A stretch of 64,000 nt of DNA, from positions 3,534,001 to 3,598,000 of the forward strand of contig NW_027271384.1 in NCBI RefSeq assembly GCF_040938485.1, read 5' to 3'. The translations under genes and the position numbers were made by a program. Below the pieces are notes generated by a model that did no database searches, was not told the origin of the DNA, and saw only the letters and a program-made list of their open reading frames with translations. How positions within the stretch are numbered: the stretch's first letter is position 1; each line of letters begins with the position of its first letter. Origin of the DNA: Diadema antillarum (Eukaryota). Positions 25,272 to 53,200 of the stretch are shown here, piece by piece.

Positions 25272-28106
25272 GTATGTCCGATATACACTTTTATCTAACT
25301 TGAGACATGCTGGGTTTTCTTCTTTTTTTTTCTTTCTCAATGGCGATAGTTAAATGTAAATGGCACGGGAATAAGGAAAGCTTTGCCGAAAATTAGCCAG
25401 AAACCACACGAGTTTCACGACTATTCGATCATACACATCGATTTGACAAGAAAGCCATTTGTAAGTTTAGCATATTGCTGCTCACTCACTGCTTGTCAGT
25501 GATGATTGATAGCGATGGCATAAAAATTAATGTAATGCTTACAATTTTGATTTAGATGATTAAAATCACCAAAGGTAAAAACGAATCCTGGACGCTATTC
25601 TGATTGTTAGCTATTTTTGTGAGGAATCGCCCCACCCGCGTGCGGCCTACGCCAAGTGGCGCCATTTTACCGATCGAAAGCTATCTACTGGACAGCCCGC
25701 GAGGACAGGTGGCGGGAGTCGTAGCAGGTTGAAACATCATTATAATGGTGGCAGCAGTTATGATTAGCACATGCCGGCACATCCGAAGAAAAATGATGCG
25801 CTTAGAATTAATGTATGATTCCCGCTTGAATCAGAAAAACTTATTTCCACGTCATGCTACATAGCGAGATTGTATTTCTGTGTTGCCTAGTTGAATTCTC
25901 TCCTTTTTCTTTACTAATATCATAACTTATGGGCTAACGTTTCAATCGTGTTATAAAGAAAACATAGGAATAAAATCTCCATGGATGAATTAGCTATAAA
26001 AACTACCGATTCTTTATCACCAGGTATAATTCATAACTGAATCATAGCTAGTTGGATTGTTGGTTTCTCAGTTAATCTTAACTCTGTGCTGTTGTTTTTC
26101 TACTGAGCAGAGTTTCATGGCTCAAAAATCAATCCGTTGTCTTGACTTCAAAGAGGAATATTTTCTTGCTCCAGGGAACGTGACACAAAAATAATTTTCT
26201 ACTGCATATCATAGCACATGTTTTGATGGGCCATGAATGCAACGTAAGGAACTGGTAAATCTCATGCAAATGATTTTCTCAGTGAATTTTCCTAAGTCAA
26301 GATTTGGTAACCTATCCTAGCAAAGAAAAGTGAGAATTAAAACTTAACACGTTTATATCAAGTACAGTCTACAAAGCATATGGTGCTGCATACTTTCAAA
26401 TTAAAAATGTTGTATGAGAACGTGTGTTTCGATAATCATCCAATTCTTGGAACACGAACGTATGGTACTCGTTATCAAATGCTATCGCAATATCTATATG
26501 CGTCGTACTGTACATGGCTGCAGTGAATTTCCCAAACCGCGATCTCCTATAGACCGTGAAGTTAAAAAGAAAGAAAGAAAAACCATAGCCCGGCTGAAGT
26601 GGCGATATAAGGTCAGGGGCACAGCGTGGCTAGTCTACCATTATGCCGGCATAGAGGGCATTATGGGGGGGGGGGGGAGAACACATCCCCCAAGAAAAAC
26701 AGGGCATCACAATGCAACGTCGCGCCAGGGAGAATGCACCAAACGGCAAGTCCTCGCTCCCATTCCGCCTCGAAGCTGCAAACAATTCCTCACAATAATA
26801 GAAAAAAAAAGAGAAATGAAAAAAAATCGCTGAATAGAATGACGTTTTGTGGCGTCATGCTAGAACGAGTCCACGTATTTTGAGCTTGGGTTTGGTTCGA
26901 TTCTTTCTTAGTATATTCCATACAAATATGGTGCCCCTTTTCTGCTCCCGGGCAAGATCCTTTGATTGATTATTTTCTTTTGCAAAGATTTTTTTCTCCC
27001 TCAATCCAGTTCCTCTTTCCCTTGGTCTCACATTGCCCATATTAGTTGGTAGCATTCGTTATTGAAAAGACACCGAAAATGACCCTGATGAGTTTCCAGT
27101 TTTCCGTTTCTCTCTCTCGAAGAGGACAAGAAAGACAGGGCCTGGGGGTAACATCGTGGTTTACTGCTATGATTTTTTTCAATAATGGAGCTAATGATAG
27201 TGTGAAGCCAGTGTTTCTGAGCTGAAACCAAAAGGGAAGTGTTCGACGGAACATGCACAAACTGCATGGTATTTATCATTACTGCACATCACTCGGCTTC
27301 CTTTCAAAATTTCAAACTTTATGATATCATATTCCAGAGTCCTTTAATACTAACTAGCCTCAAGGGCAGACCGAAGTACAGCGACTATAACCGATCGCAC
27401 ACACACAAAAAAAGATCTACGTATGATTAATGAATCTGAACGAGCCTTAATTTACATAGTTTCACCGGTGTACAATTTGATTTTTCCTTTCACATACTAT
27501 GAAAAAGCTCACAAACGAGATGTTTGCTCACGATAAACATATTTTTGTGAGTGTGGCGTTATCGGAGGTCAGACAGAATCGCATTGTCTTACTATAACGC
27601 TTGTTATCAATTGCCGCGGGATCTTAACTGAAGTACGTGATTTATCACATGGACTTTAGTCACATGCTGTCCTTCAGTACACAGCAATTACGCGGTAAAT
27701 GTCGATGGCTTCGGAGTCTATCTCAAACATACATATCTCTCAAAAAGTCAAGCAATTGCCTCTATAATAGAAGTTCTAATATACCTTCAAATATTTACTT
27801 GAAATAAGCTACGTCAGTTCTAGACAAGCCACAATATACAACAAGAAAAATGTTATATCGGGCAGGCATGATCATTCAACTATATTCCATCAAAAACTGC
27901 AAGTCATTTTTCATCTTACTTCCATATAAGTTTGGCTGTTTAAGGGCTTAGACATGATTTATCTGGAAGTTGTACTCTTTTTTAACTCACAGTAATTTTC
28001 GTGCGCACAAATTAATTCTTGTGGTGTGTCATACGCACAAAATGACATTGGCCTCACTTCCCGGATCACGGAGCATGCACAAGACGCAGGAGAGCAGGAT
28101 TTGGAC

Positions 28107-28112
28107 TATAAA
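28107..28112 (+). promoter_or_regulatory. TATA box upstream of the pre-miRNA
   Basis: TATAAA followed about 33 nt later by Inr-like CCAGT (28138-28142), 93 nt before the hairpin 5p arm. Confidence 0.45.
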
Positions 28113-28204
28113 TGCAGGAATTACGGACGGTTCCCCGCCAGTGCCCATCATCAGCTACTAGTATTCTCCGCGCGCCGACAACTCTTACACGACGCAGCAT
28201 GTGC

Positions 28205-28274
28205 CATCGCCACCAAGTGTACTTCAGTGGACACGTTGTCGCTCTCGTATCTGAGCACACTTGGTAGCGGTGCC
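28205..28274 (+). ncRNA. mir-2006: pre-miRNA, miR-2006-like
   Basis: 5p CAUCGCCACCAAGUGUACUUCA (28205-28226) and 3p GAGCACACUUGGUAGCGGUGCC (28253-28274) form a duplex with 2-nt 3' overhangs at both ends. Basal stem GCAGC/GCUGC; CNNC (CAUC) at +17. The 3p sequence matches echinoderm miR-2006 as I recall it (not database-checked). Confidence 0.88.
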
Positions 28275-30714
28275 GTGAGCTGCTTCCAGACATCGAACAT
28301 CGACAAGATCGAGGAGGAGGAGGAGGAACTTTCTCGTTAAGGATCACTTTTAGTCTTGATTCGGTCCTATCGCATGCTCTGACACTATTACCAAACTACA
28401 CGGACCGGTTGTTGTACATCTACCATGGCTTGCAATACTTTCTAGCCTATAGAGTACTTGGAGTGTTTTATGAATGATGTTGTGTGCATGGTTTTCGAGC
28501 TCAGTATATCCATTAAATTTCTCCTCCTATTTGATTCCGTTCACTCCCTTGAGCCGAATATTGCGTTCACTATACACGATACGTCTGCATCATGACGTAA
28601 TGCACGAAAAAAGTGGACCGTCAACGTTTGTCAGGATATACCACCTGACATATTTCACAAAGGTTTCAAAACCTCTGCACATTAATTTTTGTTTAAGATT
28701 CTCATGAGGGAGTGTTTCAACATTTTTAATGAAAAGTTTAACATTTTGGCACAAACGATTTTTTTCTTCTATTTTTACCTATATCATAAACGGAGTTAAA
28801 ATGCTAGATAAGATTCTATACAACATAGGTATATGACTTTCGCAAAGTTGGACACTCGGAAAATGAAATGTACCTAATATATCGGTAAGTCAGAATGAAG
28901 AGGCAATAGACGTATCTTTCGCCAGTTCCAAGTAAAACGCAATAAATCTTGCAAGTCTGATGTGCAGTTTGTCGAATGACAGTTCTTGATACCTGTGCAT
29001 TAATGAATTCTGTTAAAGACACGAAAATTTCTGTCAAAAAAAAATCCCCTCATAATTATACAGGAATTTTTTTAAAAATGACTGTCACAGGTTACGTGTG
29101 ACAGTATTGTCAACAATGTTGCATCCACTGACTTTATTAATTGGATTAAGTAACCGGCATGGCCATTACGACAGAGAAAGCATGTCTCTATAACCTTAAT
29201 AATGTCTGTACAACTTTAATAAAGGCGCCTTATGACGGCGTAAACACGTGACGAATATAACCTTTACTTTGTCGTTGGTCTACTTTTAATTGTGTCGATA
29301 TAAATGCAACTAGGCTATACGAGACAAGCATTCAGTGAGAGGATGGGGAGTCTGCGTGGGCAGGAAAGACATTTTGAATTCACGAAAGGTGATTTCAAGC
29401 ATTCATTGACTGAAGTCATGGCAATTCGTAATAAAAGGAAAATCGCGGGGCAACCATCACACAATACCTGACTATAGGTGGTGAACGCTCTGCCGTTGCG
29501 CTCGTGTAGTCTACTTATTAATTTTATTAATGGCCGCAGTTCGCGTCTTCGCAGTTAAATGAACAACCCAGATCTTATTCTTATCTCTACCAACAAGCTC
29601 TTGATCTCCGTTCTTTGAAAACTTTGTACAGCTTTTTCACAGGTTTGAATAATCAAGGTATGATATAGGCAGCACGAAAGTAAACATAGTTTTAATAATT
29701 AGACAATGCCACAGGGGTCGAGATAACCTGCTTAGTCATCCTACAGATAAAACAGAAAGAAAAATCCAACGCTGACGATGATAGGACATATAGATACAAT
29801 TTCTATCAGTAGTTCATTAGACAATAATGATTGCAAGTGCATGGGCATGCGGCTCATAATAATAGCAGTTGATGTAATCTTGCCGGTACTATTTTCGACA
29901 GTGTCTGCGAGTGTGAGTGAGTGTGTGTGTGTGTGTATGAAGATGAAGATCTGTTTTGGTTGGGAGGGGAAGGGCTAGTTTGGGTTTTTATGAATTATTT
30001 CATTCTAGATTTGTATGATGTATTTTTTTGTTTGTTTTGTTTTTGTTTTTGTTTTTATGTATATGCTCTTGTAAGTGAATATGAGCTATATGATTCAATA
30101 TATTGAAGGGATACATGTTTGGCATATATGTCAATATTTTCTCGTGAAGGATTATCAGTGGGATTAATTCGTTATCGAGTTGTATATGTTGAAGAGATTT
30201 TTGCAGTATTAATTGAAAAATGGATTTGTTTGTGTTCTGAATTGTATTTGTATTGTTTTTGTTCATGTTACACCCAGGATGGGTTGATTCACGAATGATT
30301 TGAATGAATTCAATAAATATCAATAAAAAAAAGTGTGCGTTGTATGTGTGTGTGCGCGCGTGTGTGTGCGTATTCTCTTTGACCGTCATTATCACGGTGA
30401 TTGCTCTATCGAGGTCAAAATCTCACAGAAATAACCACAATGATTATACAGCTAGTTTTGACATTAGTAAAGCAAAAAGAAACGAAGCATCATAAAAATG
30501 TACATGAAACACTATATGGGAAAAAATAATATTATGATACATCAACTCCACATCCTATCATCTGAAGTCATGAAGTACAGCGTTTATCTTTATCTCGATT
30601 TACATTAACATTTAAACCACACAATACGCATTTTTTAAACAAATCGTTTTATTTTTTAAAAATGACCAAATCAATGCAACACAAATATTCAATAACTTTA
30701 ACTAATGTATTACA

Positions 30715-30716
<2 letters not shown>

Positions 30717-30759
<43 letters not shown>
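30717..30759. repeat. (CA)n microsatellite
   Basis: Direct reading. Confidence 0.95.
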
Positions 30760-30761
<2 letters not shown>

Positions 30762-33196
30762 TGTCTTGATAAACTGAACTGACTATTCACATTCAGTGAA
30801 TCGTCTAATTCGTGTTTGTGCATATTTTGCGGTAAACCACCCATCAGCTTGGGAAGGTTGTAAAAAAGCAACAACAAAGAAACACAGTTTAGAATAAATT
30901 CGCGTCATTCGACAAATTAATGCGTAATGATATAAACCAAAAATAAATCCATCCATAGCTGCATTTTTGTTTTAGTGATATTAATATACTGTGGCATTAG
31001 TCATGTAAGAGACTTTTCCTTGTCATATCTTTCCTTGAAAATATTACATTTTAAAGTGGGGTAAATTATATTTCTTAAAATATTAGAATATATATTATTT
31101 ACAAAGAGCACGATTTTCATGCCAAAGTATAAAGTATATTAATGTAATTTTCAGTAAACTCTGGTTTTATGTACATTTCATGCAGGAGGAAAATTCTTCA
31201 TGAGGGTTAAACTTTCACGCTGTCGTTTTAATTTCTTATTGTTCAAATTGTTTATTGGAGATTCCGTTCATGACGTTTGAAAGACAGAAATGTTTTTATC
31301 ATAATCATTGTGCTCCCACGTATAATAGCACACCTATCTTACAGTATAGGGCTTACATACTCACAGTAGTGAATTCTAAATGAGCCGAAAATCTTAATGT
31401 CATGGCGAATTTTAAACGCATTGCACTGCATCCGTTTGAAAGAAAATTTCCTGGAGGTACTATACAGGTTTACTGCTAGGATTTCCCAAAGCCCACTTCC
31501 TCAAACGTGAATCACATACGGCTATGTACAGCTACCTGGGGATACTTATAAAAAAAAAAACAGTCTCAACGTCACACAAGTAGAGATTTGCTCCCTCAAA
31601 AACTTTTGTACCCTACCCTTTACCACCTCAGGGCGCAGATTCTAACCGCACATAATGCGTTGCATAAAAGGTTCATATTGAATGCAGCGATTTTCCAAAG
31701 GGAGCAACTGCGTATTCTATTACAGAAATAAAATTCTAAGCAGCTTACTGTAGTTCAAATACAAACAAGTAGCTGCATGATGTGTCTGTGAAAGGGCTGT
31801 TTTTTAGGAGGAAAAGGGCCCAACCTCTCCCTCTTTCATTCTCTAGCATACGTGTGGTTTTGCAGACATTATAGTGGCACTGTGAGAAATACACGTTTGT
31901 GGACCGCATAACCCAACGAGCCCATAATGTGCGACAAACAAGCCTTTTAGATCCCAAATTATTGATGAAAAAACACAACCTTTTCTGAGAAGCTATAAAA
32001 GATAACTATATACCGGTGTTATATTGCAATTTGTTTGTTGATAGAATACTAAGCACTGCATGTACAAAGACAGAAATGAAAGCCAATGTTGAAAATGATA
32101 TTCCCAATCAATTTGTATCAATGTAACTGTCTATAGAATTATCACGAATTTGTCTCATCGCTCTCTCTCTCTCTCTATATATATATACAATGAAAACGAA
32201 ACTCCGACAATCATCTATATACATATAGTTATCATGTCAGGCTCCAGAAGATCGTGCGGATACGTATGAGATAAATCTATATAGTATATAAGAAATGATA
32301 TTTGAGCTGGAACTCTGATTATACATTTTAATCAATGTCAGACAGATAATAAGTGAGCTGAAATGGACTCCTATTCTCAATGCGTCAATACGATATGAGT
32401 TATCAGTATATCAAGCTTTCCTTCAGCACACTTAATTCTTTCTTCTGTATGAACCTAACAGTAATCAGTCCAATCACTTTCTGTCAACTATCAGGCATTA
32501 ATGTATGAACATTAGCATAGTCAATTCCGTACGGTAGTTCTATCTCCTTATAATATACTTTATCCCTTAACTCTTCCTACACCTTGTATGACGCCATAAG
32601 GAAAAAGGAACTACTGCGACAAGTTGTGTTGTGGCCAATCGATTTACATGATGACAAGTATACGTTTGCAATTACCAATAAGCTTGTAAGAAAAGATCAA
32701 TAAATCCTGAATGCACTGAAATGCTCTCGAAATTAAGAATGGGCGAAATCCTGACGATATGATAAAATTTTGAACAGAGGTTTGTTGGAAAACCCCGTGT
32801 CTGGATAACCTTACAGTCAGGGTCTTGTGCACTGGTACAGGAAAAGAGGAATTAACACTCTAGGGGACTGGATTCAAAATGAGTGGTAGAAAATGTCTCT
32901 TTCAATTATTCCCCAGTTCCTATAAAAGGTGAAATACGACGATTTATGCAGAGTGTCGACACAACATCATTGATAAAAGTGGGCGCTTGAGAAATGAAAA
33001 CGAACGTTTTCTATGCTACCCATCAATCAACTTCATTACAAACCACTGGTGCAAAATGTTCGCCCGCGGCGGCAGAGACATGGCTGAAAGACGGTTTCTT
33101 TCGTGGTAAATGTGACTTTGCAGCTGGTTGAATTCGAACCAACCCTTTTTTAAGACGTCGCACAGGGATTAGTAGCTGGAAGGTGGCTTGCAGTCT

Positions 33197-33199
<3 letters not shown>

Positions 33200-33248
<49 letters not shown>
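33200..33248. repeat. (GT)n microsatellite
   Basis: Direct reading. Confidence 0.95.
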
Positions 33249-33252
<4 letters not shown>

Positions 33253-36200
33253 CTTTTTTTTTTCTCCGACGCGAGGAGAGACAGCGCATGTTCGTGCTGA
33301 ACAGTTTCTGCAATCTTATTGGACCGATCTAAGTGTTCCGATACTAACATATTACATTTTCAACTGTTGTCTATAGAATGGACATTTCGACGTACTATCT
33401 TTACTTGCTATTTTTCCTTTAAAAAGGTAACTAGAAGATAAATCTAAAGAGTTGTAAAGAACATAAGAATACGTACGGGATAACATGCATAATAAAGTAT
33501 TATACCAAACTGACGAAACAGTCGTAATTCGTGCTGCACAAAGTAGTCTAAAGACCTAACGTTTAGGCCAAATTTACAGCCACTGCTTATGTACGTAAAA
33601 AAGCTGCGACAGAACGTCAATTGAAGTCTGTCCTTCAGACAGTCATCTTTGAGTTAAAGTCTGTTTTCCATTGAGTAGTTTAATATCTCCTAATTATTCT
33701 TTCAAGAGAGAACAAATAGTTTCACATTTATGATATCATGAACTATAAGGGAAATTTGAACAATCTGCACAATGTTTACCGGCAAATTTTTCACTAGCTT
33801 CAACAATTCAGATACTGTTTTGTCTCTTCCGCCGACTGCAACTGATTATAATGCACAAGTTTGGGCCATATCAGACGTGATCGGCTACCGTAAAATGATC
33901 GGCCCTTTGTGTGTCCGTCTAGAATGCCGCACCCCTCCGTATAAAGCCCGCTGCCCACCTGTACGAGGGCGAGGCTTTAGGTGAATAGTCCAGTCAGGTC
34001 GGGGCGTTCTGGCATAGCAACGCAATTTTCGTCAGCACGGGAACGGCTCCCTGTGTGTGCACGTGATGTGCATTTTGGCGCGCAGGTGTATAGTATTTAC
34101 AATCGTGTTGTGTCGTGTGGAAATATACTGCCTTAGCCGAGCATTTTTCCCCGTCTACAAGGAACCGGTAATATTATTACACCTATGGCATGAAGACATT
34201 CATGTTGCTAAAACTGCATATACTCTAAAGCGAAACATTTTGACACACTGCACGTATTAATTACTACTCTCAAGCAAACGGTACACGAACACTTTAAATA
34301 CCATTTGAGATATTCTCATCTTAATTCGAAAATGTAAATTTGGATATTCACAATGTCGAGAAGATTCATTGTTTCAATTCAACTCGACTGCATCTTTAAT
34401 ATGTAACAATAAATACGCTCACTGATAGGAAACAACCATAGGAAAAAAAAAGTAAGATTGTCACCCAATTGTCATAAGCACCAGTTCTCTTCAACATATA
34501 CTCCGCCTGACACAGGTCGCGCAAGTTTTAGTTTCTCAGTAACTGAATGTAATGTTCTGGTAACGCTTCCCCTATCCACTCCCCCACGTGCGATGATTGC
34601 TATTATATCGCACATTAATTGCCGCTATATCGCGGTTTGCTCTGTTTATAACTTCATGAGACGTCACTAAACCCGTTCTCTGCAATATTCTACAAATTCT
34701 CGTAGACATTACACACTAAAATGGACAGGACCAACCAGATTCTGGACGGCATACAGGCTTTCATACATTCGATGGATTATAGAATACCATTCGCGCTGTC
34801 TGTTCACGCTTGCATCCACTTTAATTATTTCCACGCTCTCGGAATTCAGTGATAGAGACACATGGCCTTCGCAAACCTGTCATGTTATTGCACGGACCTC
34901 TTATGGATCTGTCACAGTCACGCTCTTATCAACAACACTCTCTCACGTTACAACAGAGGAAGGTTTCACTGGTATACATGTATTAACGAAAATACCCTGT
35001 TTGGTGAAAACATAATTATGAAATTTTCTTGGAGAGACCAAGTATAACGAAACCCCAAACGAATCACAGTGGCACAGTTAGTCGATTAAGACTGACTATA
35101 CCCCCCCCCCCCCATTTACAGTTTTTTTTTTTTGTGTGTGTGTGTGTGTGTATGAATAATAAACACGGTCAAAGGTCGCGGAGCCATCGCTCTTTATAAG
35201 TACACACCATTCATCTCTCGCCATATCAAGCAAGCCAAATTTCAAGGTGCACTGATAAAGCAAGTTTACCCAGAGCTTTGCGGTAATTTCTCACGAATAT
35301 TACTGTTCATTTCAGGCACTTAACAGTTCCATGTTATCTATGATTTGAATTAATTTGAATTAATCTCTATCAATTACTGTCAAGAATGTTCAATTCACTT
35401 GAAGTTTAAAAACGCGGTACACTTATATATCATCTCAACTTAACTATATAAGATTGGGATATTCCAGGTTGTACTGTTTGTACTGAATAAAAATCGCATA
35501 CCTTCAATAACGATCGCATGGTGCTGAATGTAAGGGCATTTTCTCTTTAAAGTAGGAATACAGCTATTGTGATGCAATTACTATTTAGCATTCAAATCAA
35601 CATATATCATTATTGTCCCAAGGACGTACGCCTCAACTGCTGTTTGTATCACCTGGCATTTCTGCGTGTATGGAAGTTGTAAGTTTGAACTATGTGCTTT
35701 ATACCAAAGGTAATGTGAGGATCTGTAAATTATAAGGATGGTAAAGGCTATCGCAGATATATCTTTATATGATGCACTGAAGTTAGGTAAGTTTAGAATA
35801 ATACATGACATTCTCAAAAAGGCAGCCTGACATCTGATTAAATGTCCCTTCTAGATTCTTCTATGATTAGAAAGAAGACCGAAAAGAGACACGCATGCAC
35901 TAAGAATGTTTGGTATAATCCATACTCTTTGGGAAGCGGTTGTCCGCATTTACAAGGAGAAAATTCTTCTCGTCCTTAGGCAAGACCGGGGGAATAGGAT
36001 GCATTTTTCTTTTGTCGTAATGGCAAAATGAGATGCACCAATTATAATTTGCGTCGTGCCGAGCGCTTTCACCATTCACACACAGCGGTCGATCCTCCGG
36101 CAGCGAAAAGGGAAACTGGAACAAGGTCGCCCGGACAAAATAGCGCCACTTTTGTCGATATTCTCTTATCTGCCCCCAACCCTCGCGACTAATCAGTCGA

Positions 36201-39200
36201 TGGCCCGGATGTTACGTGTGACGCGATGCTCGGAAAAGCCGCCCATGCAGATCCAACCCACGCCTCGTGTCCAGGCATGATGTAAAGTGCTGATGAATTG
36301 GAGCGTATGAAGAGAATATTTGCCGCCTGAGTTTCCCTTTTGTCCGCCACTTCAAATACTGATTACTCTTCTTCGAAGACAAGATACTTTTATGGTAAAA
36401 TAAAATGTATATCTGTGTGACTTTTTAGTATTTTCATTTAGAATCTTATTTAGCAATGTAAAGCAGGGAGAACATTATTACTGCTCTCCATTGTGATCCC
36501 AAACGGACTTTTCCTATCATTAGATTAAATTTCTAAAACTTTCCAGATAATTTTAGAGAAATTGATAGAATAAATAAAAAAATACAGCTTCAACTTTGAC
36601 AATGAAGCAGTGTATTCCGCCCAGCATTTACGAGTTTCAAAAGAATCAATCAAAACAAACGCAATTTCAAGGCGGGAAAAACTTTGCGCCCTTACTCTAA
36701 AACATGATATCCCAAATATGAATGTCAAATACATGAACCGTACTGGAGTTTGATACCTTATCTTGCCCAGCTATCTTCATTAGATGTCTATCATTTCGTG
36801 AAATGCGATACCAGGTTCCGTCGCGACATCCCCGCTTAAGTCTACACACTCGCATCGCAGTAGGTTGTCAAGGCAACAAGTCATATTGACGCGAGTTACC
36901 ATGTTAACATCACGACCACACACTCCATCTTTGATGCATTGCCGAGACGAAGCCAATATCGTAGCGAATCCGAGTTTATATCAAAATGACATTTTAGTGA
37001 TGATGGCATCGAAAAAGGGGAGATGGTAATTTCAGTTTACCCCGCATGTAAATGATCAAATCCACTGAGCGATAATGACAATCTGCCCCGACACATCATC
37101 TCTTTTTTCAGTTCATTGTCTCTAGCCATAAGTTTGCATAATCCTCTCCCACCCCCTCCCTTAAACAAGCATTATATATACACACAAAAAAAAAAGCAGC
37201 AGAAGAATCATCAAGAAAACGAATCGTGATGTACATGCTTACATTTAACATTATTGTGTCGGTCATATTGTGAAATGTTTTCTCATTCAGGGCTTCCCTG
37301 TCCAGGTAAACACAATTAGAAGTATTATGTAGGGCACCTACTTTATCATACTAGTTATCTGTTCGGGAATAAAGCATTAGCTTGAATGAGAGAGAAAGGA
37401 GACAAGATGCAGAATTTCAGAGGTGCAATCGATTTTTTTTTCTTTATAACATTACATTTGTTTGGGAGGGTGACATTGTTTGATTTTATGATAACATGGC
37501 GCCAGACAGTGATTGATATATAGGTACACACTGGTCGCATTGATTTCTGTTTAATTGCCCGAGTTCCTTTTAAACTCTAATCTTTGAAAGGTTCGCCGGT
37601 AACGACGGCCTATTAATGAATCTCGCCGATGAACGGGTGAATGTACGTTATCACTGTTACTCTGACAGCTGACTCTATAGTATTTCTGCAGGACATGTAA
37701 CGAGGTAGAACGACAGTGATGGACAATGTACGTAAAGTCTCACGATACTGTAATGAAAGTCAGTTTTTATGCGCCATACTTCGAGTAAATGAGTTTGCCT
37801 ATTCTCAACATTTGGTATTAATAAGTCAAGCTTCACACATCACTATCCTCTCGTGCAACCAACGAAAAATCTAAACCTATCCTAGTCTTTGAGGGGGTGT
37901 CTTCAAAAGTGACATTATTTTGAGCAATCACACATCTTACTGCCGTTCACACTGTTGTACGCGTCTCTCCAAATTGTGATGAGTAAAAGAGTTTATTGCT
38001 GTAGATATAGATGGTGACGATAGTGATAAACGATTGCTGGGTATTACAAGTTTCACATTAAAATCGACTGTCCGTAAAACATCGTATACGCTGCACGTAC
38101 CGCCCCGTTTGTTGGCTCCTATTTGTGTCTGTCTATACCTGTACAAATCAATGTGACTGCTTTATGTTTAGCCCAGCATTTCGTATCGATTCAAACTAAC
38201 AATCCAGGTAAGCAAGATTTGTATGATTGGATTTGGACGATTATTGTCGAGAAGCTTGTTCATCATCTCTCTTTTTTTTTTGTTTTTTTTAGCTGACAAT
38301 CTCAACGGTTCGAAGCGCGTACAAATTAGATTTTTGAAATTCTTTCTGGATAATCTTTTAAGTCTCACCTGGTCATTTTGAAACAGTGGGGTAAAGTAGA
38401 TTAAATGACTGATTACCTAAACTGGTAAAATGGTGTAGCGAATATTTGATTTATCTAACTAGAGAGGGAGAGAAAAGATGAAGGCAAATATGCGGCCCAA
38501 ATAGTTCCCATGGCATATATGCCCGTACACAAAACAGAGAAAAAAAAATCTTGGTTCATTCTTTCAGTTTAGGTTCATTTTTCTCTACGTTATTTTTTAT
38601 CTCGTTTCATATTTCTATTATTCATGTCTGTCCAGCGTACAAAACGTGCATGACACAATATAATTCCAGGATGAATAGCTGTGCAAATGCGACGCGAATG
38701 GAGCAAACACAATGCCAAAGAAGAAGTCTTTCGATCAAGGCCCACCCCCCCCCCCTCATGTTTGCCAGAATGAAGTGGAGATATATGAATACAGAGGAAA
38801 AACTGCTTAGTAACCGAGTGCACCGTAGGGAATATGTTTGCGCATCGAAGTGGAGAATGGCATGTATTATTATATCTACTCCAATCTTTGCATTTTATAG
38901 GCGTATTTTATTGATTTAGCAATCCTTTCTATGCATTCTCAGCAAAGCTACTGCTTTTGAGCGACTGTACTTACACGTAAAAAATAATCCAATACAGTAT
39001 CTCTATTTGGAATTGGAGTAGAATCAATAGATGTAAACAACGCCATATATACGTAAAGCGCCCAAAAGTGGTAATGTGAGGTAAGAAACCCCCAAATAAA
39101 TACTCTAACTGAACTCAATGTACAAGATATCGCTGGGTAGACACACCGAAAAAAAAAAATCGCCCTAGAATATCTATCAGTAAAACGAAACATGCGACTT

Positions 39201-39959
39201 CATATACGCGATAGAGTTCACTTAATCTTAATTTTAGACCAATTCAACTGCCCAAGGGCATTACAATGTATTCACAACAGTCTCGCGTTTTGCGTAATTG
39301 AAATTAATAGAAGCCTTAATAAAAGTGTATACACATGAATATACGTATATAGAGTAATATAAAAGATGCATGCATAATGCATTGGGAAAATGAATGCATT
39401 TCTGTCGCGAGCGTCGTTCAAGGTCCGTACACGACGGTACTTAAACAAATTACTTTCCGCTTCGTGTGGAAGATCAACGGTGGGGGAGGGGTGTAGGGTT
39501 AGTCAGCAAGAGTTCCACAGGTATATGTAATGTGGAACGTAACAAATCATACACGCTTAGTTGTGTGTGTGCGTACACACATCCAATTTCTTAAACTCGC
39601 GAACACATCATGCGAACACGCAACCAATTCTTTTAACTCACGAACACATGATGCACATTTCTATTCCGATGCAATGAGAAGAAACAAAAGGAGACATTGA
39701 AGGGCACATAAAGGGGAAAGGGAATCCACTCCTCACGCATTTCACAGGTTAATATCACACTGTCACGTATTTTGCAGCACAGTACTTGATGCAACACCAG
39801 TGAACGTTTGAATGTGCAAAGTTGCAAGCATAATCTAAAACTGAATAGAGGCTATATAATTTTAGTAATCCACAATTATACATTTAATGCCATCAGTGGC
39901 AATTACATTTTTAAGATACGCATCATGCATGTCTAACAGAATGCACCAAAGGAAGGTTG

Positions 39960-40023
39960 AGAGATAGAAAATAGAGATAGATAGATGGATATAACATAGA
40001 GGTAAATAGAAAGATAGATAGAC

Positions 40024-40059
<36 letters not shown>

Positions 40060-40760
40060 GGATAGATGGATAGACAGCGATAGATGGATAAATGATTCAA
40101 GATTCAAGATTCAAGATTCAACTTTATTTATGAATTTTTATTTATTTACGATATTCATATTAAAGATTCAACTTTATTAAATGGATCGACATAAAAGGTG
40201 GATAGATGGATAGACGGGGAAAGATGGATAGATGGATAGATTGAGATAGATGGATAGATGGATAGACAGAAAAGTTGGATAGATGGATACACGGGGAAAG
40301 ATGGATAGATGGATAGATTGAGATAGATGGATAAATGGATAGACAGCAATAGATGGATAAGAAAGATAGACAGAAAAGGTGGAGAGATGGATAGATGGGA
40401 AAGATGGATAGATGGATAGACAGAGATGGATAGATGGATTTATAGATAAAAAGAAATAGGTATATACACAGAGATAGAGAGGGATAGATGTATAGACAGA
40501 AAAAGATCACTTTTAGATGGATAAACAGAAAATAGGAAGATAGACAGATTGATAGATGGATAGACAGAGAGATAGAAAGATAGATTGATAAATAGATAAA
40601 CAGAAAATGATAGATAGATAGGCAAATGAATAGATATATAAACAGAAATAGATAGATAGATAAACAGAGAAAGAAAGATAGATATAATAGACAGATTAAC
40701 AGATAGATAGATAGACAGACAGACAGAGATAGAGCGAGAGAGAGAGAGAGAGAGAGAGAG
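39960..40760. repeat. About 800-bp degenerate (GATA/GATG/GACA)n compound microsatellite ending in (GA)n
   Basis: Direct reading; internal block duplications near 40200 and 40280. Confidence 0.92.
40094..40128 (-). mobile_element. LINE/SINE-type 3' tail remnant: AATAAAG(TTGAATC)4
   Basis: Four GATTCAA units followed by CTTTATT on the plus strand; second partial copy near 40163-40178. Confidence 0.5.
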
Positions 40761-41052
40761 GGCGGGCATTAGGTAGTTTCGATCTCCAATCTTTGTCTTT
40801 CGGAAGAGACATGCACACTACAATAAATGAAAAAAAAAAGGCAATCGCTCAAAACTCAGTTGCAATCACATGATATCATTATGCACGCCAGGAGAGCAAA
40901 TAAGTTCCACTTAATGTCAACACTCAACAGAGACCAAGAATCAAAAGGAGGATAAACACATGGTCATTTCCAAATTCAAAGGTAAAAGCCACCAACTGGA
41001 TAAGTGAGAGAACACGCATGAATAGACACTGAATGCCTCGCTCCTTACTCAC

Positions 41053-41106
41053 GTCTGCCGTTGGTGGCTTTGTATTTCCCACAATTCACACTGCTCTCCT
41101 CCGTAT
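41053..41106 (-). CDS. Candidate 54-nt phase 1-1 micro-exon (DTEESSVNCGKYKATNGR)
   Basis: Strong donor GTGAGT; weak acceptor; 72-nt intron to the upstream exon. Confidence 0.4.
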
Positions 41107-41178
41107 CTGTCATCTTCCATGCAGAAGGTATGAAATAAGTACGGCAGCGTGATAAAAAGTTCTGGAGCTAAAACTTAC

Positions 41179-41250
41179 CGATAGGGGGCGTTGTTGTCTG
41201 CGCTTGCGTCGTCTCAAACATGGTTGTATCGGCAGTGGTGACGACATCAT
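41179..41250 (-). CDS. Thr-rich micro-exon (72 nt)
   Basis: DDVVTTADTTMFETTQAQTTTPPI; ttgttttcAG / GTAAGT; phase 1-1. Confidence 0.82.
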
Positions 41251-44990: not shown

Positions 44991-45021
<31 letters not shown>

Positions 45022-46009: not shown

Positions 46010-47281
46010 CTGGTTTCATTTTGAATTTTCATATGTGATAACAAGTCAAATGGTTAAAAGATGCAAAGATGCGAGTGTGGTGCATGCATAAGAAATGTAA
46101 TGGTAGATATTAGAAATGCAATTGGACAAAAGTCACACTCGTCACGGCAAGATAATATAAAACTTCGACATGCAGTGCGGTACGAGTGATAGGCTGAATG
46201 GATGATCATCATGCAAAACATGCAACATGGGTGAAAAAAATAGTAACAATTTCAATGCCCGAAAATGCAGCAATTAGTGAATCCGTTGATCTGACAGCAC
46301 GGTACACGTACAATTTTTGCAGGCAGTGCAGTTACGTGATCATTGCTACATGGTGGCATTTGTGTTGCATTTAACCCGCTTGGGAATAACGGTCCGAAAA
46401 TGCCATTTTTAAAATTCTATTAACGAAAGTCAATGCTGTAGGACAAGGTTGAACAAAACTAGAGGAAACGGAGATTTTAATGAAATGTCTTTTTTTTGCA
46501 AATATGTGAATAGACAAAGCAGACACGCACCTAACAGTACCTAATGGTCAAACTTGAAAGAAAAGGAAAGCTTATTTACATTGTAACTTTGCAAGTATCA
46601 TCACATTGTAAACAACCGTTTGGGGAGATGTGAATCGTTTTGAAACGAAACAAAGACAAAGTATCAAAATGGGCTTACATAAAGAACGACCAAAATACAG
46701 TATTAATATATTTGCTCGAGGCACTAAAGATTCCTGCTATGCGTGGCTTCTCAATTTATTAGCAAAGTCTAATACAAAATGAACAGGGGCCGTGGAATGT
46801 TTTTCAGTGCGTGGGGGGGGGGGGTGTCAAGTGTAAATGGTAACCCCCATCCCCCCATCCCCTCCCCTTATCAGATCAAACTAATATGATGCAACATCAG
46901 ACAAGCAATATCAAGGACAAAGGAACAAAACACACAAAATTACATGAAACTCAATGACGTTATACAGTCACATTCACATATCAAAACACATATACGAATT
47001 AACTGTCTATACGATCGAAACAACATAATATATTATGTGATATTAGAATATTCGCAAGTCACAGTAATTGATATTGATTATGACACAGATGGTGAGTTGC
47101 ATGTGCGGGTTAAGTACGTAAATACAAAGATATAACTGCGGTATGAGTATGGAGAGTATATGGTAAGGTAAGTCCAAAGAGTCAGTGCGGTTGAAAACTA
47201 TAAGGGTATTACAGCGAGTCACACATCGAGGTTAATGATCAAGTCTCGGTGTTATACAGGGGAGACACACAATCGATTTAC

Positions 47282-50200
47282 CTTGAGTGGTAGACTTGTC
47301 AGGAGAACTCTGGGGCATCGTAGTGAACTGGGGAGAAGTTGTTCTACCCTTTGTCGTCCTTCTTTCTGTGGACAAGCCCAAGTTGGGCGTGGTAAGGTCA
47401 GTCGTGGTCACTATGGCAACATTATCAGTTGTGGTTGCCGGAGCTGATCTGAGAGTGCTTGCCCTCAGATCCTCAGTAGACAAGGGTCCAACACTCGGGG
47501 CTAGCGTTGAGGAGCTCCCTACTTTACTTGTAATATCTGTAGTGAATTCTATAGAGACCGAAGTCGTTGAAAGAAGTGATGATGTTGTTAGATCTGAGAA
47601 GGAGGTTGTTGCCTGCATCTCCTCTGTTGAGACCGGCAGGATTGCCGTTGTTCTGACAGAGGGCGATGTCATCATATCAGCGGTAGACGCATCTTTCAGC
47701 AAGGGAGTACTTAGCTCTACGCTAGTTGTGATTTCTGGCGTAAGCAGTTTACTGGTCATATCAGGTGTGGATCTCTGTTTCACATCTGTCGTTGCTAAAA
47801 CGTCGGTGCTGGTATCGGTACTTATTCTATCTGTCAGCACAGCAGACGTCGACACTCCCGTCTTATCAGGTGTGGATCTCTGTATTACATCTGTCGTTGC
47901 TAAAACATCGGTGCTGGTATCGGTACTTATTCTATCTGTCAGCATAGCAGACGTTGACACTCCCGTCTTATCAGATGTGGATCTTTGTATCACATCTGTC
48001 GTTGCTAACACATCGGTGCTGGTATCTGTACTTATGCTATCTGTCAGCACAGCAGACGTCGGCACTCCCGTCTCATCAGGTGTGGAACTCTGTATCACAT
48101 CTGTCGTTGCTAAAACGTCGGTGCTGGTATCGGTACTTATTCTATCTGTCAGCATAGCAGACGTTGACACTCCCGTCTTATCAGGTGTGGATCTCTGTAT
48201 TACATCTGTCGTTGCTAAAACGTCGGTGCTGGTATCGGTACTTATTCTATCTGTCAGCATAGCAGACGTTGACACTCCCGTCTTATCAGGTGTGGATCTC
48301 TGTATTACATCTGTCGTTGCTAAAACGTCGGTGCTGGTATCGGTACTTATTCTATCTGTCAGCATAGCAGACGTTGACACTCCCTTCTTATCAGGTGTGG
48401 ATCTCTGTATTACATTTGTCGTTGCTAAAACGTCGGTGCTGGTATCGGTACTTATTCTATCTGTCAGCATAGCAGACGTTGACACTCCCGTCTTATCAGG
48501 TGTGGATCTCTGTATCACATCTGTCGTTGCTAAAACGTCGGTGCTGATATCGGTACTTATTCTATCTGTCAGCAGAACAGACGTTGACACTCCCGTCTTA
48601 TCAGGTGTGGAACTCCGTATCACATCTGTTGTTGCTAAAACGTCGGTGCTGATATCAGTACTTATTCTATCCGTCAGCACAGCAGACGTTGACACTCCCG
48701 TCTTATCAGGTGTGGATCTCTGTATTACATCTGTCGTTGCTAAAACGTCGGTGCTGATATCGGTACTTATTCTATCCGTCAGCATAGCGGACGTTGACAC
48801 TCCTGCGGGGTCTGATGACGTCATAATGCTTGACAGGCGCATAGTGGAACTGTCCACGGTGGACAGATCTGACACTATATCTGACAACATCACGGTGGAT
48901 GCCTGCTGGCTGTCAGTTGTCAATGACGTTGTTGACACCAAGGGCATTGTAGAAATATCTGTAGTCAAAATACCCGTCGTCGGCTGTGGTTTCATGCTTT
49001 CGGTCGGCAAATCTGACGTCGAACTTGTTATTGCTGACGTTAGGGTCTCTGATGTTGCGATGGTCAGCGCATCCTCTGTCGACAGGTCTGTTGTTAAATC
49101 ATTAGCATACACATCTGTTGTTAGAGGAGGTGTTAGTGCATTTGTTTTAAAACTCGTCGTTAAAGAATTTGCTGGAAAACTGCTGGTAGGAGCATCTGAA
49201 CTTATATCAAGAGAAGATATGTGTGTTATTTCAATTGTATTTGTTAAGAAAGTAGGCAAGTTATCAGTTGACACTGGGCTTTGAGAGTAGATTCCATCAG
49301 TACGTTTATCTGAAACACGAGCGGATGCACGGTCAGTAGTGAAATCTGTAAAGTAACTGGTAGTTAACTGTTCAGTAGACTGAAGTGGTGGTGTAGTCTT
49401 TGTATTCGTCTCTGTAGTGTAAACAGCGGAACTTATGACGTGAGATGTTTTATCAGTTAAAGTTTCTGTAGGTGCATATGAACCTTCTGTCACACCTGTA
49501 GAGCTGTCTTCGGTAAAAAAATGTGTGGTAAAGCTTAGGCCTACAGATGCATTTTCTGTTTTGAAACTAGGAGTAGATGTATCTGTACTAACATCCACAG
49601 TACTCCTTTCGGTACTAAAAGGGTAAGTGGGTGATTCTGTGTTAATCTCATCAGAAGTAAGATATTCGGGGAATTCGGTCATTGTAGCGGTTGTTACGGT
49701 AGACGTGTCTGCAGCTACTACAGTGGAAGACATCTGCGTACTAACATCGTCAGCAGAGGTCTGTGTGGATAAAGTCCCACTTGTAATTTCTGGAGTAGGA
49801 TATGCAACAGACGAATGTGTGGGTATCTCTGTACTTAACTCCTCAGTGGACATTCTTACGGACACATCTACAGTATTCGTGCTACTAGACACCATTGTAC
49901 TAATGCTATCTGTTGTTAATTGTGTTGTGGACACAGCTGTTTCTAAATCCGTTACAGACTTTTGCGTTTGTGAACTAAAATCCTCTACAGTAGTTTCAAT
50001 AACTGTTCTGTCAGTAGACATATCTGTGGTAAGATCAGCAGTAGTCGACTCTGTAGATCGACTTTCAGTGGGTGCATCTGTACTTAATCCCTTGAATGAT
50101 GCCTCAGTGGACATATCTGTTGTAGACAGAAGATCACTAATGGCATCGCTAGTTTGCAAAGTAGTTAATTGATTAGTTGATATAGGTGATCTGAATTCTA

Positions 50201-53200
50201 TAGTAGATATATCTGAGGAGATCCCCATAGTTTTAAAGTCTGTACTAATTCCCTTGGTGAACATTTCAGTTGTCAACCCTGCTGTAGATTTTAAACTACT
50301 AATGTCGGTAGCCACTTCCTCTGTTGATTCATCTGGTACAACAGTTGTTTTTACATCTGTAGTGATTTCATCTGTAATCTGTTCTTGAGTCATAGTCATT
50401 GTGAGTGTGCTAGGATCTACTTTTAACATTGATGTTAATCCTTCAGTAGATTCATCCACAACTGTAGATACATTTGTAGTAAAGCTATCTGTTGCTAATT
50501 TTGTAGTGGACACACCTGTAGCTAAATTTGTTGAACCCATCAGAGTAGTTTCAATAATTGCTCTGTCTGTAGACATATCTGTGGTAAGATAAGTAGTAGT
50601 AAACTCTGTAGATTGACTTTCAGTGGGCACACCTGTACTTAATGCTTTGGATGATGCCTCTTTGGACATATCTGTTGTAGACAGAAGGTCACTAATGGCA
50701 ATGCTAGTTTGCAAAGTAGTTATTTGATTAGTTGATACAGGTGAACTGAATTCTATAGTAGATATATCTGAGGAGAACCCCTTAGTTGGAAAGTCTGTAC
50801 TAATTCCCTTGGTGAACATTTCAGTTGTGAACCCTGCTGTAGATTTTAAACGACTAATGTCGGTTGACACTTTTGTGGATTCATCTGGTACAATAGTTGT
50901 TTTTACATCTGTAGTGATTTCATCTGTAATCTGTTCTTGAGTCAGAGTCATTGTGAGTGTGCTAGGATCTACTTTTAACATTGATGTTAATCCTTCAGTA
51001 GATTCATCCACAACTGTAGATACATTTGTAGTAAAGCTATCTGTTGCTAATTTTGTAGTGGACACACCTGTAGCTAAATTTGTTGAACCCATCAGAGTAG
51101 TTTCAATAATTGCTCTGTCTGTAGACATATCTGTGGTAAGATAAGTAGTAGTCAACTCTACAGATCGACTTTCAGTAAGCATATCTGTACTTAATGCCTT
51201 AGATGATACCTCTTTGGCCATACCTGTTGTAGATAAAAGGTCAGTAATGCCATCAGTCGATATTTCAATGCTTTGACCTTCAGTAAATCTATCTGAAGTA
51301 TGTCCATCACTAAAATTATCTGTAGACATTTCTGTAGTAATATTTTCTGAAAGTATGTCTGTGACCTTTTCACTTGTGAGTTCCTCAGTAGAGATAAGTG
51401 AATTCATATCTACAGTAGAAGTAAATTCTGTACTGCTAGTTTGTAAAGTAGTCAATTGATTACTTGACACAGAAGAACTAAATTCGGGAGTAGATATATC
51501 TGAGGAGAGCCCTTCAGTTGGGAAGTCTGTACTAGTTACACTAGCCACCATTTCCGTGGTCAACCCTGCAATAGATTTTAAACTACTACTGTCGGTAACC
51601 ATTTCCTCTGTGGATTCATCTGGTACAACAGTTGTTTTTACATCTGTAGTGATTTCATCTGTAATCTGTTCTTGAGTCACAGTCACTGTGAGTGTACTTA
51701 CATCTGCTTTTAACATTGACGTTAATCCTTCAGTAGATTCATCCACAACTGTAGATACATCTGTAGTAAGGCTATCTGATGCTAATTTCACAGTGGACAT
51801 ATATGTAGCTAAATCTGTTACAGGCTCTTGTGTTTGTGAACTAACATCCCCTACAGTAGTTTCAATAATTGCTCTGTCAGTAGACATATCTGTGGTAAGA
51901 TAAGTAGTAGTCGACTCTGTGGATCGACTTTCAGTGGGCACATCTGTACTTAATGCCTTGGATGATGCCTCTTTGGACATATCTGTCGTAGACAGAAGGT
52001 CATTAATGACATCGCTAGTTGTTGTTATTCCTTCAGTGGATTCATCTATACCTGTAGATAGATCTGTACTAAGGCTATCTGTTGCTAATTTCATTGTAGA
52101 CATATCTGTAGATAAATTTGTTACGGACTGTTGCGTTTGTGAACTAACAACCTTAGCAGTAGTTTCAATAATTGCTCTGTCCGTAGACATATTTGTGGTA
52201 AGATTAGTAGTAGTCAACTCTGTAGATCTACTTCCAGTGGGCACATCTGTACTTAATGCTTTGGATGATGCCTCTTTGGACATATCTGTTGTAGACAGAA
52301 GGTCACTAATGGCATCGCTAGTTTGCAAGGTAGTCAATTGATTAGTTGATACAGATGAACTGAATTCTGAGGTAGATATATCTGAGGAGAGCTCTTCAGT
52401 TGGAAAGTCTGTACCAATTCCTTTTGAAAACATTTCAGTTGTGAACCCTGCTGTAGATTTGAAACTACTAATGTCGGTAGCCACTTCCTCTGTTGATTCA
52501 TCTGGTACAACAGTTGCTTTTACATCTGTAGTGATTTCATCTGTAATCTGTTCTTGAGTTATAGTCATTATGAGTGTACTAAAATCTATCTTCAACATTG
52601 ATGTTGTTAATCCTTCAGTAGATTCATCCACAACTGTAGACAGATCTGTAGTAAAGCTATCTGTTGCCAATTTCACAGTGGACATACCTGTAGCTAAATT
52701 TGTTGCAGACTCTTGCGTTTGTGAACTAACATCCTCTACAGCAGTTTCGGTAATTGCTCTGTCAGTAGACATACCTGTGGCAATATTAGTAGTAGCCAAC
52801 TCAATAGATCGACTTTCAGTAAGCACATTTGTACTTAACGCCATGGAAGATACCTCTTTGGCCATGGCTGTTGTAGACATAGGGTCAGTAATGCCACTGG
52901 TCGACATTTCGGTACTAACATCTTCAGTAAACATATCTGAAGTACGTCCCTCGCTAACTATTCCTGTGGAAAGTATGTTTGTGGATATGCCTAGGGTTTG
53001 AGCTACTGAAAAAGTAGGATACGTTACATCATAAGTCAACATTTCTGTGGTAGACTGTTTCAAAGACGTATCAAATATATCTGTTGTCAGAACCTCAGTT
53101 GTGAATCTCCTTGTGGACAAATCCATGTCTAAAGACATGGTAGAACTATCTGTGATATCTTTGGCTGTTTGCATTTCTGTTGTCTGAACTTCTAATGGTT

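What the first reader, a model, noticed from the sequence alone, without database searches (positions are those of the whole stretch)
28107..28294. Canonical pre-miRNA (miR-2006-like) with its own TATA box, antisense to and embedded in the mucin locus
Seen: a 70-nt hairpin with two 22-nt arms, exact 2-nt 3' overhangs at both the Drosha and Dicer ends, a basal GCAGC/GCUGC stem, CNNC at +17, and TATAAA about 95 nt upstream. The ORF track hides it under three spurious ORFs. From memory, GAGCACACUUGGUAGCGGUGCC is the mature echinoderm miR-2006, which would also identify the phylum. I am not aware of a described link between this miRNA and a giant VWD-mucin locus. Antisense nesting could allow transcriptional interference or co-regulation.
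Basis: partly seen in the sequence, partly recalled or inferred. Interest (0 to 1): 0.75.

Follow-up and report, generated by a model that had tools for sequence, protein, structure and literature searches.

The report
Sea-urchin mir-2006 inside mucin gene intron
This is a genuine copy of the known echinoderm microRNA gene mir-2006, and it sits backwards inside an intron of a giant mucin-like gene, in the same place in a feather star, which suggests the pairing is very old.

Summary
The hairpin is real and is mir-2006. Rfam RF03979 scores 96.8 bits (curated cut-off 90) at window 28193-28284 (+). The 3p arm, 28253-28274, equals the published spu-miR-2006 22-mer.

The window is Diadema antillarum (GCA_040938485.1, contig JBFRCO010000496.1, 100% identical). 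The miRNA lies antisense in an 18.6-kb intron (41178-22557, minus strand). That intron follows the last Thr/Ser-rich (PTS) exon of an annotated giant gene with VWD/C8/TIL, FN3 and transmembrane parts.

The crinoid Anneissia japonica has an identical mature sequence, also antisense, in the intron after the last PTS exon of the homologous gene.

Two hemichordates (Glandiceps, Saccoglossus) carry a diverged hairpin with the same seed in homologous genes. There it is in the sense orientation and in a different intron.

A CNNC motif at +17 is present in four loci and at +16 in the fifth. The stems show compensatory changes.

The "own TATA box" is unproven. No RNA runs were listed. A 1.35-kb block about 3 kb upstream is 93-100% identical to D. 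setosum and is an equally good promoter candidate.

The family is known and the Diadema copy is a new member. The conserved nesting appears undescribed. No earlier scan note covers this miRNA.

The parts
28193..28284 (+). mir-2006 precursor hairpin (basal stem, both arms, loop)
   Evidence: Rfam RF03979 scores 96.8 bits against a gathering score of 90. My own covariance model R1 scores 96.2 bits. Fold z-score is -2.8.
28205..28227 (+). 5p arm. The end at 28226 or 28227 is not determined.
   Evidence: Pairing table from the Rfam structure. The arm is identical in L001 and differs at one base in Anneissia.
28253..28274 (+). Mature miR-2006-3p
   Evidence: Identical to the spu-miR-2006 22-mer printed in PMC4669494. 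It occurs once in the window. It is 22/22 identical in L001 and in Anneissia L002.
28291..28294 (+). CNNC motif (CATC) at +17 from the Drosha cut on the 3p side
   Evidence: CNNC is at +17 in the window, L001, Anneissia and Glandiceps, and at +16 in Saccoglossus, although the surrounding flanks do not align.
28107..28112 (+). TATAAA, the candidate proximal promoter element (unproven)
   Evidence: It matches TATAWAWR 8/8 at -98 from the 5p start. Matches of 7/8 lie at -103 in Anneissia and -109 in Glandiceps; L001 has none. There is no transcript evidence.
22557..41178 (-). Host-gene intron (18.6 kb) that contains the miRNA on the opposite strand
   Evidence: The annotated protein P0279 matches the window exactly on both sides. 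The sequence ...TTTPPI ends at 41179, followed by GTAAGT, and E-TSTCRVWG starts at 22556 after an AG. The intron is phase 1 at both ends.
41179..41250 (-). Last Thr/Ser-rich (PTS) mini-exon before the intron
   Evidence: Exact 8-mer mapping of P0279 residues 241-264, plus the splice sites.
22332..22556 (-). First VWD exon after the intron
   Evidence: Pfam VWD, E 2.2e-13. Splice sites were read. The exon is in P0279.
47232..58799 (-). Giant PTS (mucin-domain) open reading frame of the same locus, 3855 aa
   Evidence: ORF list. Its phase-1 donor CAAG|GTAAAT near 47280 fits the phase-1 acceptor of the next PTS exon near 46010.
23941..25290 (.). Conserved non-coding block in the same intron, a rival candidate for the pri-miRNA promoter or first exon
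   Evidence: 93-100% identity to Diadema setosum, against 72-88% in the flanking intron. The + strand has a TATA-like GATATATAC near 25100 and a GTAAGA donor at 25194. No Pfam, Rfam or tRNA match.

Best explanation
Window 28193-28284 (+) is the Diadema antillarum gene for microRNA mir-2006, a canonical Drosha/Dicer substrate.

Processing (inferred from the model): an 11-position basal stem sets the Drosha cut. A CNNC motif at +17 probably helps Microprocessor recognition. The 3p arm, 28253-28274, is the documented mature product.

Position (shown): the gene lies on the opposite strand inside the 18.6-kb intron that follows the last mucin-domain (PTS) exon. The host is a giant gene with VWD/C8/TIL, FN3 and transmembrane parts, resembling IgGFc-binding protein (FCGBP).

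Transcription (inferred): because it is antisense, it cannot be cut out of the host pre-mRNA. It must be transcribed as its own unit from a + strand promoter inside or beyond that intron. Which promoter is unresolved: TATAAA at 28107, or the conserved block near 25.1 kb.

Age (shown for the crinoid, inferred for the rest): the miRNA-host pairing is old. The same antisense, post-PTS-intron arrangement exists in a crinoid. Hemichordates carry a diverged, seed-sharing hairpin in the sense orientation in another intron of homologous genes.
For: Identity: Rfam score above the gathering cut-off. The mature sequence equals the published spu-miR-2006.

Strand: + scores 96.8 bits and - scores 35 bits. 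A U:G pair is invariant in all five loci; it would be an A-C mismatch on the other strand.

Structure under selection: 89.7% of cells are paired, against 27-45% when partners are slid. Eleven of 29 pairs change on both sides, against 2-4 in the slid controls. Zero of 500 shuffles reach the covariation score.

CNNC: at +17 in four loci and +16 in the fifth.

Species: the window is 100% identical to L011 from GCA_040938485.1, which is D. antillarum.

Host intron: exact mapping of the annotated protein P0279 across the miRNA. The other haplotig carries a 15,310-aa model running into the same exons. The D. setosum model also ends on the 22.5-kb VWD exon.

Crinoid: mir-2006 at L002:14370-14451 on the minus strand of a plus-strand gene. 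It lies in intron 12666-18768, directly after the PTS exons.

Hemichordates: L003:15016-15111 (+), 37.6 bits with my model R1 and 23.3 with Rfam. L009:12330-12422 (+), 31.8 bits with R1 and 29.8 with Rfam. Both lie in the same VWD-to-C8 intron.
Against: No small-RNA or RNA-seq evidence from Diadema: none was listed. Expression, arm ends and the start site are therefore all inferred.

Orthology of the Anneissia gene rests on architecture, on a near-unique match of the FN3 tail, and on the miRNA itself. Protein identity is only about 36%.

The hemichordate hairpins fall far below Rfam's gathering score. They are in the opposite orientation and in a different intron, so their homology is probable, not proven.

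Loci from Apostichopus, Holothuria and Amphiura showed no hairpin. I take these for paralogues, but that was not tested.
Confidence: 0.85

Rival explanations
1. One reading: the TATAAA at 28107 is the miRNA's own core promoter. It would start a short pri-miRNA about 55-65 nt upstream of the hairpin base.
For: A perfect 8/8 TATAWAWR match at -98, with a background rate of 0.007 per position. An Inr-like CCAGTG lies 33 nt downstream, and the 28000-28500 patch has 49% G+C against 36-40% around it. Anneissia has a 7/8 TATA-like run at -103.
Against: L001 has no such element. Glandiceps has one at -109 even though its hairpin is sense-intronic and needs no promoter, which suggests such matches arise by chance in A+T-rich introns. 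The upstream flanks do not align between species. No start-site data.
Confidence: 0.3
2. The pri-miRNA starts at the conserved block 23941-25290, for example at a short first exon near 25125-25193 with a donor at 25194. The hairpin would then lie about 3 kb downstream in that non-coding transcript.
For: The block is 93-100% identical between D. antillarum and D. setosum, while the neighbouring intron is 72-88% identical. The + strand has a TATA-like motif, an initiator-like GCCATTTTG and a GTAAGA donor. An earlier scan note, s1-217875, independently called this a promoter-like island.
Against: Nothing links the block to the miRNA. It could be an enhancer, an alternative host promoter or another non-coding gene. 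It has no counterpart in the Anneissia, L001 or hemichordate loci. The D. setosum locus stops at window 26151, so conservation around the miRNA itself could not be compared.
Confidence: 0.3
3. The conserved nesting is passive. The miRNA simply sits in a long intron that was never broken up, and there is no regulatory interplay with the mucin gene.
For: Only the hairpin and CNNC are conserved across classes; the rest of the intron is not. In hemichordates the orientation and the intron differ, so no single geometry is required.
Against: Linkage to the same gene family persists across a sea urchin, a crinoid and two enteropneusts, despite an orientation flip and a move between introns. That is more than neutral drift would usually preserve. 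miR-2006 is abundant in sea-cucumber intestine (6401 RPM, PMC3797095), a plausible mucin tissue. This is only a lead.
Confidence: 0.55
4. The hairpin is also, or instead, processed from the host pre-mRNA strand as a 'mirror' miRNA.
For: The minus strand folds even more stably: -47.9 kcal/mol, z -3.6.
Against: Covariance models favour the + strand by about 60 bits. The invariant U:G pair becomes a mismatch on the other strand. The published mature sequence is from the + strand.
Confidence: 0.08

Closest known systems
mir-2006 family (Rfam RF03979; miRBase spu-mir-2006)
   Same: Full-length match above the curated score. The mature 3p arm is identical. Same hairpin architecture and an echinoderm host.
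   Different: The loop and basal-stem sequences differ from the family consensus through compensatory changes. The genomic context described here is not part of the family description.
miR-199a-2/miR-214 in DNM3OS, antisense within a DNM3 intron in vertebrates (from my own knowledge, not checked here)
   Same: A conserved miRNA gene transcribed from the strand opposite to a host intron, as its own non-coding unit.
   Different: A different miRNA, host and phylum. In that case the antisense transcript and its promoter are experimentally defined; here they are not.
Conserved sense intronic miRNA-host pairs such as mir-33/SREBF (from my own knowledge)
   Same: A long-lived linkage of one miRNA to one host gene. 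The hemichordate hairpins found here are sense-intronic in this way.
   Different: In echinoderms the miRNA is antisense, so co-transcription with the host is impossible.
IgGFc-binding protein (FCGBP), zonadhesin and gel-forming mucins, as comparisons for the host gene
   Same: Repeated VWD-C8-TIL modules flanking a huge Thr/Ser-rich domain.
   Different: The Diadema protein ends in FN3-EGF repeats, a second PTS stretch and a transmembrane segment. Only the Anneissia protein shared that tail in the length-limited search.

Membership tests
mir-2006 (Rfam RF03979) | Covariance-model score at or above the curated gathering score (90 bits) | tested here: met
   96.8 bits, E 2.4e-21, model positions 1-91 of 91.
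mir-2006 (Rfam RF03979) | Mature 3p sequence matches the described miR-2006 | tested here: met
   Window 28253-28274 equals the spu-miR-2006 22-mer in a table of PMC4669494.
mir-2006 (Rfam RF03979) | Occurs in an echinoderm | tested here: met
   The window is 100% identical to GCA_040938485.1 contig JBFRCO010000496.1, Diadema antillarum.
Canonical animal miRNA (Drosha/Dicer product) | Imperfect hairpin with about 22 paired positions per arm and a basal stem of about 11 positions | tested here: met
   Pair table. Positions 28194-28204 form the basal stem, with 21 paired or bulged positions above the cut.
Canonical animal miRNA (Drosha/Dicer product) | 2-nt 3' overhangs at both cuts | tested here: inconclusive
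   The Drosha end gives 2 nt in the model. The Dicer end gives 1 or 2 nt, depending on an unobserved 5p end.
Canonical animal miRNA (Drosha/Dicer product) | Small-RNA reads from both arms with fixed 5' ends in this species | not testable with these tools
   The look-up of sequencing runs listed no RNA run, so read laying could not be used.
Canonical animal miRNA (Drosha/Dicer product) | Conserved arms with a diverged loop and flanks, and compensatory stem changes | tested here: met
   Alignments A1 and A4. Eleven of 29 pairs are compensatory, and 0 of 500 shuffles reach the covariation score.
Independent TATA-driven transcription unit | A transcription start about 30 nt downstream of the TATA box | not testable with these tools
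   No RNA data. The motif is present, but its conservation is inconclusive.
Antisense intronic miRNA | Lies within an annotated intron, on the strand opposite to the host | tested here: met
   P0279 exons at 41250-41179 and 22556-22332 on the minus strand, and the miRNA on the plus strand. The same holds in Anneissia.
mir-2006 membership of the hemichordate hairpins (L003, L009) | Rfam gathering score | tested here: not met
   23.3 and 29.8 bits against 90. mir-2006 is nevertheless the best-scoring family at both hairpins. The seed AGCACAC and the 5p start CAUCG are shared. They work like relatives but cannot be filed as members.

The most novel reading that the evidence does not exclude
mir-2006 did not arise within echinoderms. 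It arose in the ambulacrarian ancestor as a sense intronic miRNA of an FCGBP-like mucin gene. In echinoderms it was inverted and moved to the post-PTS intron. It has stayed tied to that gene because the two are functionally coupled, through shared gut or mucosal regulatory DNA or through antisense transcription that modulates the host.
Probability: 0.2. Interest if true: 0.7.

Novelty: new member of a known kind. Interest (0 to 1): 0.45.

Why it matters
The miRNA family itself is already catalogued, so re-finding it in Diadema is ordinary. Two things add value.

First, the antisense nesting after the mucin-domain exons is shared by a sea urchin and a crinoid, the deepest split among living echinoderms. 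This is one of the less common cases of a long-conserved antisense miRNA-host pair, and it offers a defined system for testing whether such nesting has regulatory meaning.

Second, seed-sharing hairpins in homologous genes of two enteropneusts suggest the family is older than echinoderms. That would change its use as a phylogenetic character.

Both points can be tested directly with existing small-RNA libraries and public genomes.

Tried and rejected
- RNA evidence: the look-up of sequencing runs (kind rna) on 23500-29499 listed none. No reads were laid, and the start site and arm ends stay inferred.
- Searching the PTS domain for relatives found nothing.
- An exact-ORF look-up of the 180-aa PTS exon found nothing.
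- The all-protein search with the VWD exon was dominated by vertebrate multi-VWD proteins. It became useful only after I re-ranked the hits by colinearity with the window.
- Loci from Apostichopus japonicus (L004, L005), Amphiura filiformis (L006) and Holothuria leucospilota (L007) had no mir-2006-like hairpin. They lack the FN3 tail and are probably paralogues, so I do not count them against the nesting.
- Upstream and downstream flanks of the three echinoderm hairpins do not align, so TATA conservation could not be judged by alignment.
- Seed-site counts in the host locus were at chance level, and no 3'UTR is annotated.
- A Pol III reading (TATA plus a T4 run at about 28349) was considered. 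I dropped it for lack of any supporting feature in the other loci.
- The sub-threshold mir-297, mir-466 and mir-1277 matches are TA/CA simple repeats, not miRNAs.
Only proteins returned by the tools were used.
- The N run in L002 (1410-2256) was left as it is.

Full report
**Observation.** Rfam's covariance model for mir-2006 (RF03979) matches 28193-28284 on the + strand over its whole length. The score is 96.8 bits against a curated cut-off of 90, with E 2.4e-21, and it is the only family in the 64-kb window to pass its cut-off. The opposite strand scores 35 bits.

The 3p arm, 28253-28274, is letter for letter the 22-mer printed as spu-miR-2006 in a table of PMC4669494. It occurs once in the window even when 3 mismatches are allowed.

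In the family structure, positions 28194-28204 form the basal stem. C28205 pairs with G28272, giving a 2-nt overhang at the Drosha end.

The fold is better than all 200 shuffles. The two long ORFs over the hairpin have no credible Pfam match.

**Species and host gene.** A search with the FN3 tail of the closest relative returned a masked, window-encoded protein. Its cluster and contigs identify the source.

- L011, from GCA_040938485.1 contig JBFRCO010000496.1, is 100% identical to the whole window.
- That assembly is Diadema antillarum, annotated by NCBI (PMC13511894).

All domain-bearing exons in the window are on the minus strand. Running from high to low coordinates they are:

- VWD/C8 at 62.8-63.2 kb, TIL at 61.8-62.0 kb and EGF at 61.1-61.3 kb.
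- A 3855-aa Thr/Ser-rich ORF at 47232-58799 and a further PTS exon at about 45.56-46.01 kb.
- Five PTS mini-exons between 42.6 and 41.18 kb.
- Two VWD-C8-TIL-EGF modules between 22.6 and 3.8 kb.
- FN3-EGF repeats.

The annotated protein P0279 matches the window exactly. It joins the mini-exon ending at 41179 (donor GTAAGT) to the VWD exon starting at 22556 (acceptor AG), phase 1 on both sides. The miRNA therefore lies antisense in the 18.6-kb intron 41178-22557.

Other annotations agree:

- On the second, uncollapsed haplotig (95-98.5% identical), the corresponding model has 15,310 residues and runs into the same exons.
- In D. setosum a 2927-residue model also ends on the 22.5-kb VWD exon.
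- The C-terminal model P0277 carries a transmembrane segment, so the product is probably a membrane-tethered mucin-like protein.

I did not build a spliced model myself. Exons were searched one by one by reference.

**Conservation of the nesting.** The closest representative of the gene outside Diadema is XP_033095406.1, annotated as IgGFc-binding protein-like, from the crinoid Anneissia japonica. It has the same VWD/C8/TIL, PTS, FN3 and EGF order. Its FN3 tail was matched only by the Diadema protein in a length-limited search.

Its locus L002 has the gene on the + strand. mir-2006 is at 14370-14451 on the - strand, scoring 71 bits with Rfam, with the mature 22-mer identical. Exact exon mapping puts it in intron 12666-18768, immediately after the PTS exon (10003-10860) and a PTS mini-exon (12621-12665). 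So the orientation and the intron position relative to the mucin domain are shared by an echinoid and a crinoid.

A third copy, on metagenome contig JAAUXV010039950.1 (L001), has both arms identical and no coding sequence within 7 kb.

**Hemichordates.** A covariance model built from the three echinoderm hairpins found one further hit among seven other loci. It is L003:15016-15111 on the + strand of the Glandiceps talaboti FCGBP-like gene, at 37.6 bits.

A second hit is L009:12330-12422 on the + strand of a Saccoglossus kowalevskii FCGBP-like gene, at 31.8 bits.

- Both hairpins fold well: z -3.65 and -2.9.
- Both lie in the same intron, between the last VWD exon and the first C8 exon of the first module.
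- Both share the seed AGCACAC and the 5p start with miR-2006.
- Rfam's independent model names mir-2006 as the best family at both hairpins, but at only 23.3 and 29.8 bits.

They are therefore probable distant relatives, in the sense orientation and in a different intron. They are not family members by the curated test. No paper in the held library mentions these sequences, or mir-2006 in hemichordates.

**Processing signals.** Across the five loci, 89.7% of stem cells pair, against 27-45% when partners are slid. Eleven of 29 pairs show changes on both sides, against 2-4 in the slid controls. No shuffle in 500 reaches the covariation score. One U:G pair is invariant, which marks the + strand as the selected one.

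CNNC sits at exactly +17 in Diadema, L001 and Anneissia (all ACATC) and in Glandiceps (CAGC), and at +16 in Saccoglossus. The flanks are otherwise unalignable. With CNNC at 4% of positions in the window, this is very unlikely to be chance. That last step is my inference.

**Promoter.** The TATAAA at 28107 is a perfect TATAWAWR match at -98. Anneissia has a 7/8 match at -103 and Glandiceps one at -109. L001 has none, and the Glandiceps hairpin would not need a promoter.

Independently, 23941-25290 in the same intron is 93-100% identical to D. setosum, while its surroundings are 72-88% identical. It carries + strand TATA-like, initiator-like and splice-donor motifs, as an earlier scan note also remarked. 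It has no protein, Rfam or tRNA match and no counterpart in the other phyla or classes examined.

Without RNA data I give each promoter candidate about 0.3.

**Function.** It is shown that this is a conserved hairpin with the family's mature sequence, in an antisense intronic position. It is inferred that it has its own Pol II transcription unit, that Microprocessor and Dicer process it, and that 3p is the dominant arm.

The only expression lead comes from sea cucumber. miR-2006 reaches 6401 RPM in active intestine and falls to 1762 RPM in aestivation (PMC3797095). It is nearly absent from coelomocytes. This fits a mucosal tissue but says nothing direct about the host gene.

**Verdict.** This is a known miRNA family and a new member in Diadema. 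The "antisense, embedded" reading is right and now has intron-level detail and deep conservation behind it. The "own TATA box" and any regulatory coupling remain open.

Noticed in passing
window 23941-25290: A non-coding block that is 93-100% identical to Diadema setosum, while the flanking intron is 72-88% identical. It is more conserved than the neighbouring coding exons. No Pfam, Rfam or tRNA match. It could be a promoter, an enhancer or a non-coding exon.
   Followed up: partly
L003:15016-15111 (+) and L009:12330-12422 (+): Enteropneust hairpins that share the miR-2006 seed. They are sense-intronic in the same VWD-to-C8 intron of FCGBP-like genes in Glandiceps talaboti and Saccoglossus kowalevskii. 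They may be an undescribed hemichordate miRNA.
   Followed up: partly
window 44627-57809 (= L011:14623-27805) versus L008:1-9948: The two haplotigs of the same assembly are annotated very differently. One has a 15,310-residue model. The other has three separate PTS 'genes' (286, 609 and 1283 aa) lying inside an intron of a 1820-aa model that skips the giant exon.
   Followed up: partly
window 1-21918 versus L008 (JBFRCO010000616.1): The locus is present twice in GCA_040938485.1 at 95-98.5% identity. This agrees with the incomplete haplotype collapse reported in PMC13511894.
   Followed up: yes
L008, C-terminal part of the P0277 gene (protein residues about 1163-1186): The C-terminal model has a hydrophobic transmembrane stretch followed by a charged tail. 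The giant mucin-like protein is therefore probably membrane-anchored rather than secreted.
   Followed up: no
L009:12568-12745: A long, near-perfect inverted repeat about 150 nt downstream of the Saccoglossus hairpin. It matches plant MIR families at 55 bits, below their cut-offs, and looks like a MITE-type foldback.
   Followed up: no
window 22715-22785 and L002:2690-3100: Sub-threshold mir-297, mir-466 and mir-1277 matches over TA/CA simple repeats. These are low-complexity artefacts, not miRNAs.
   Followed up: yes
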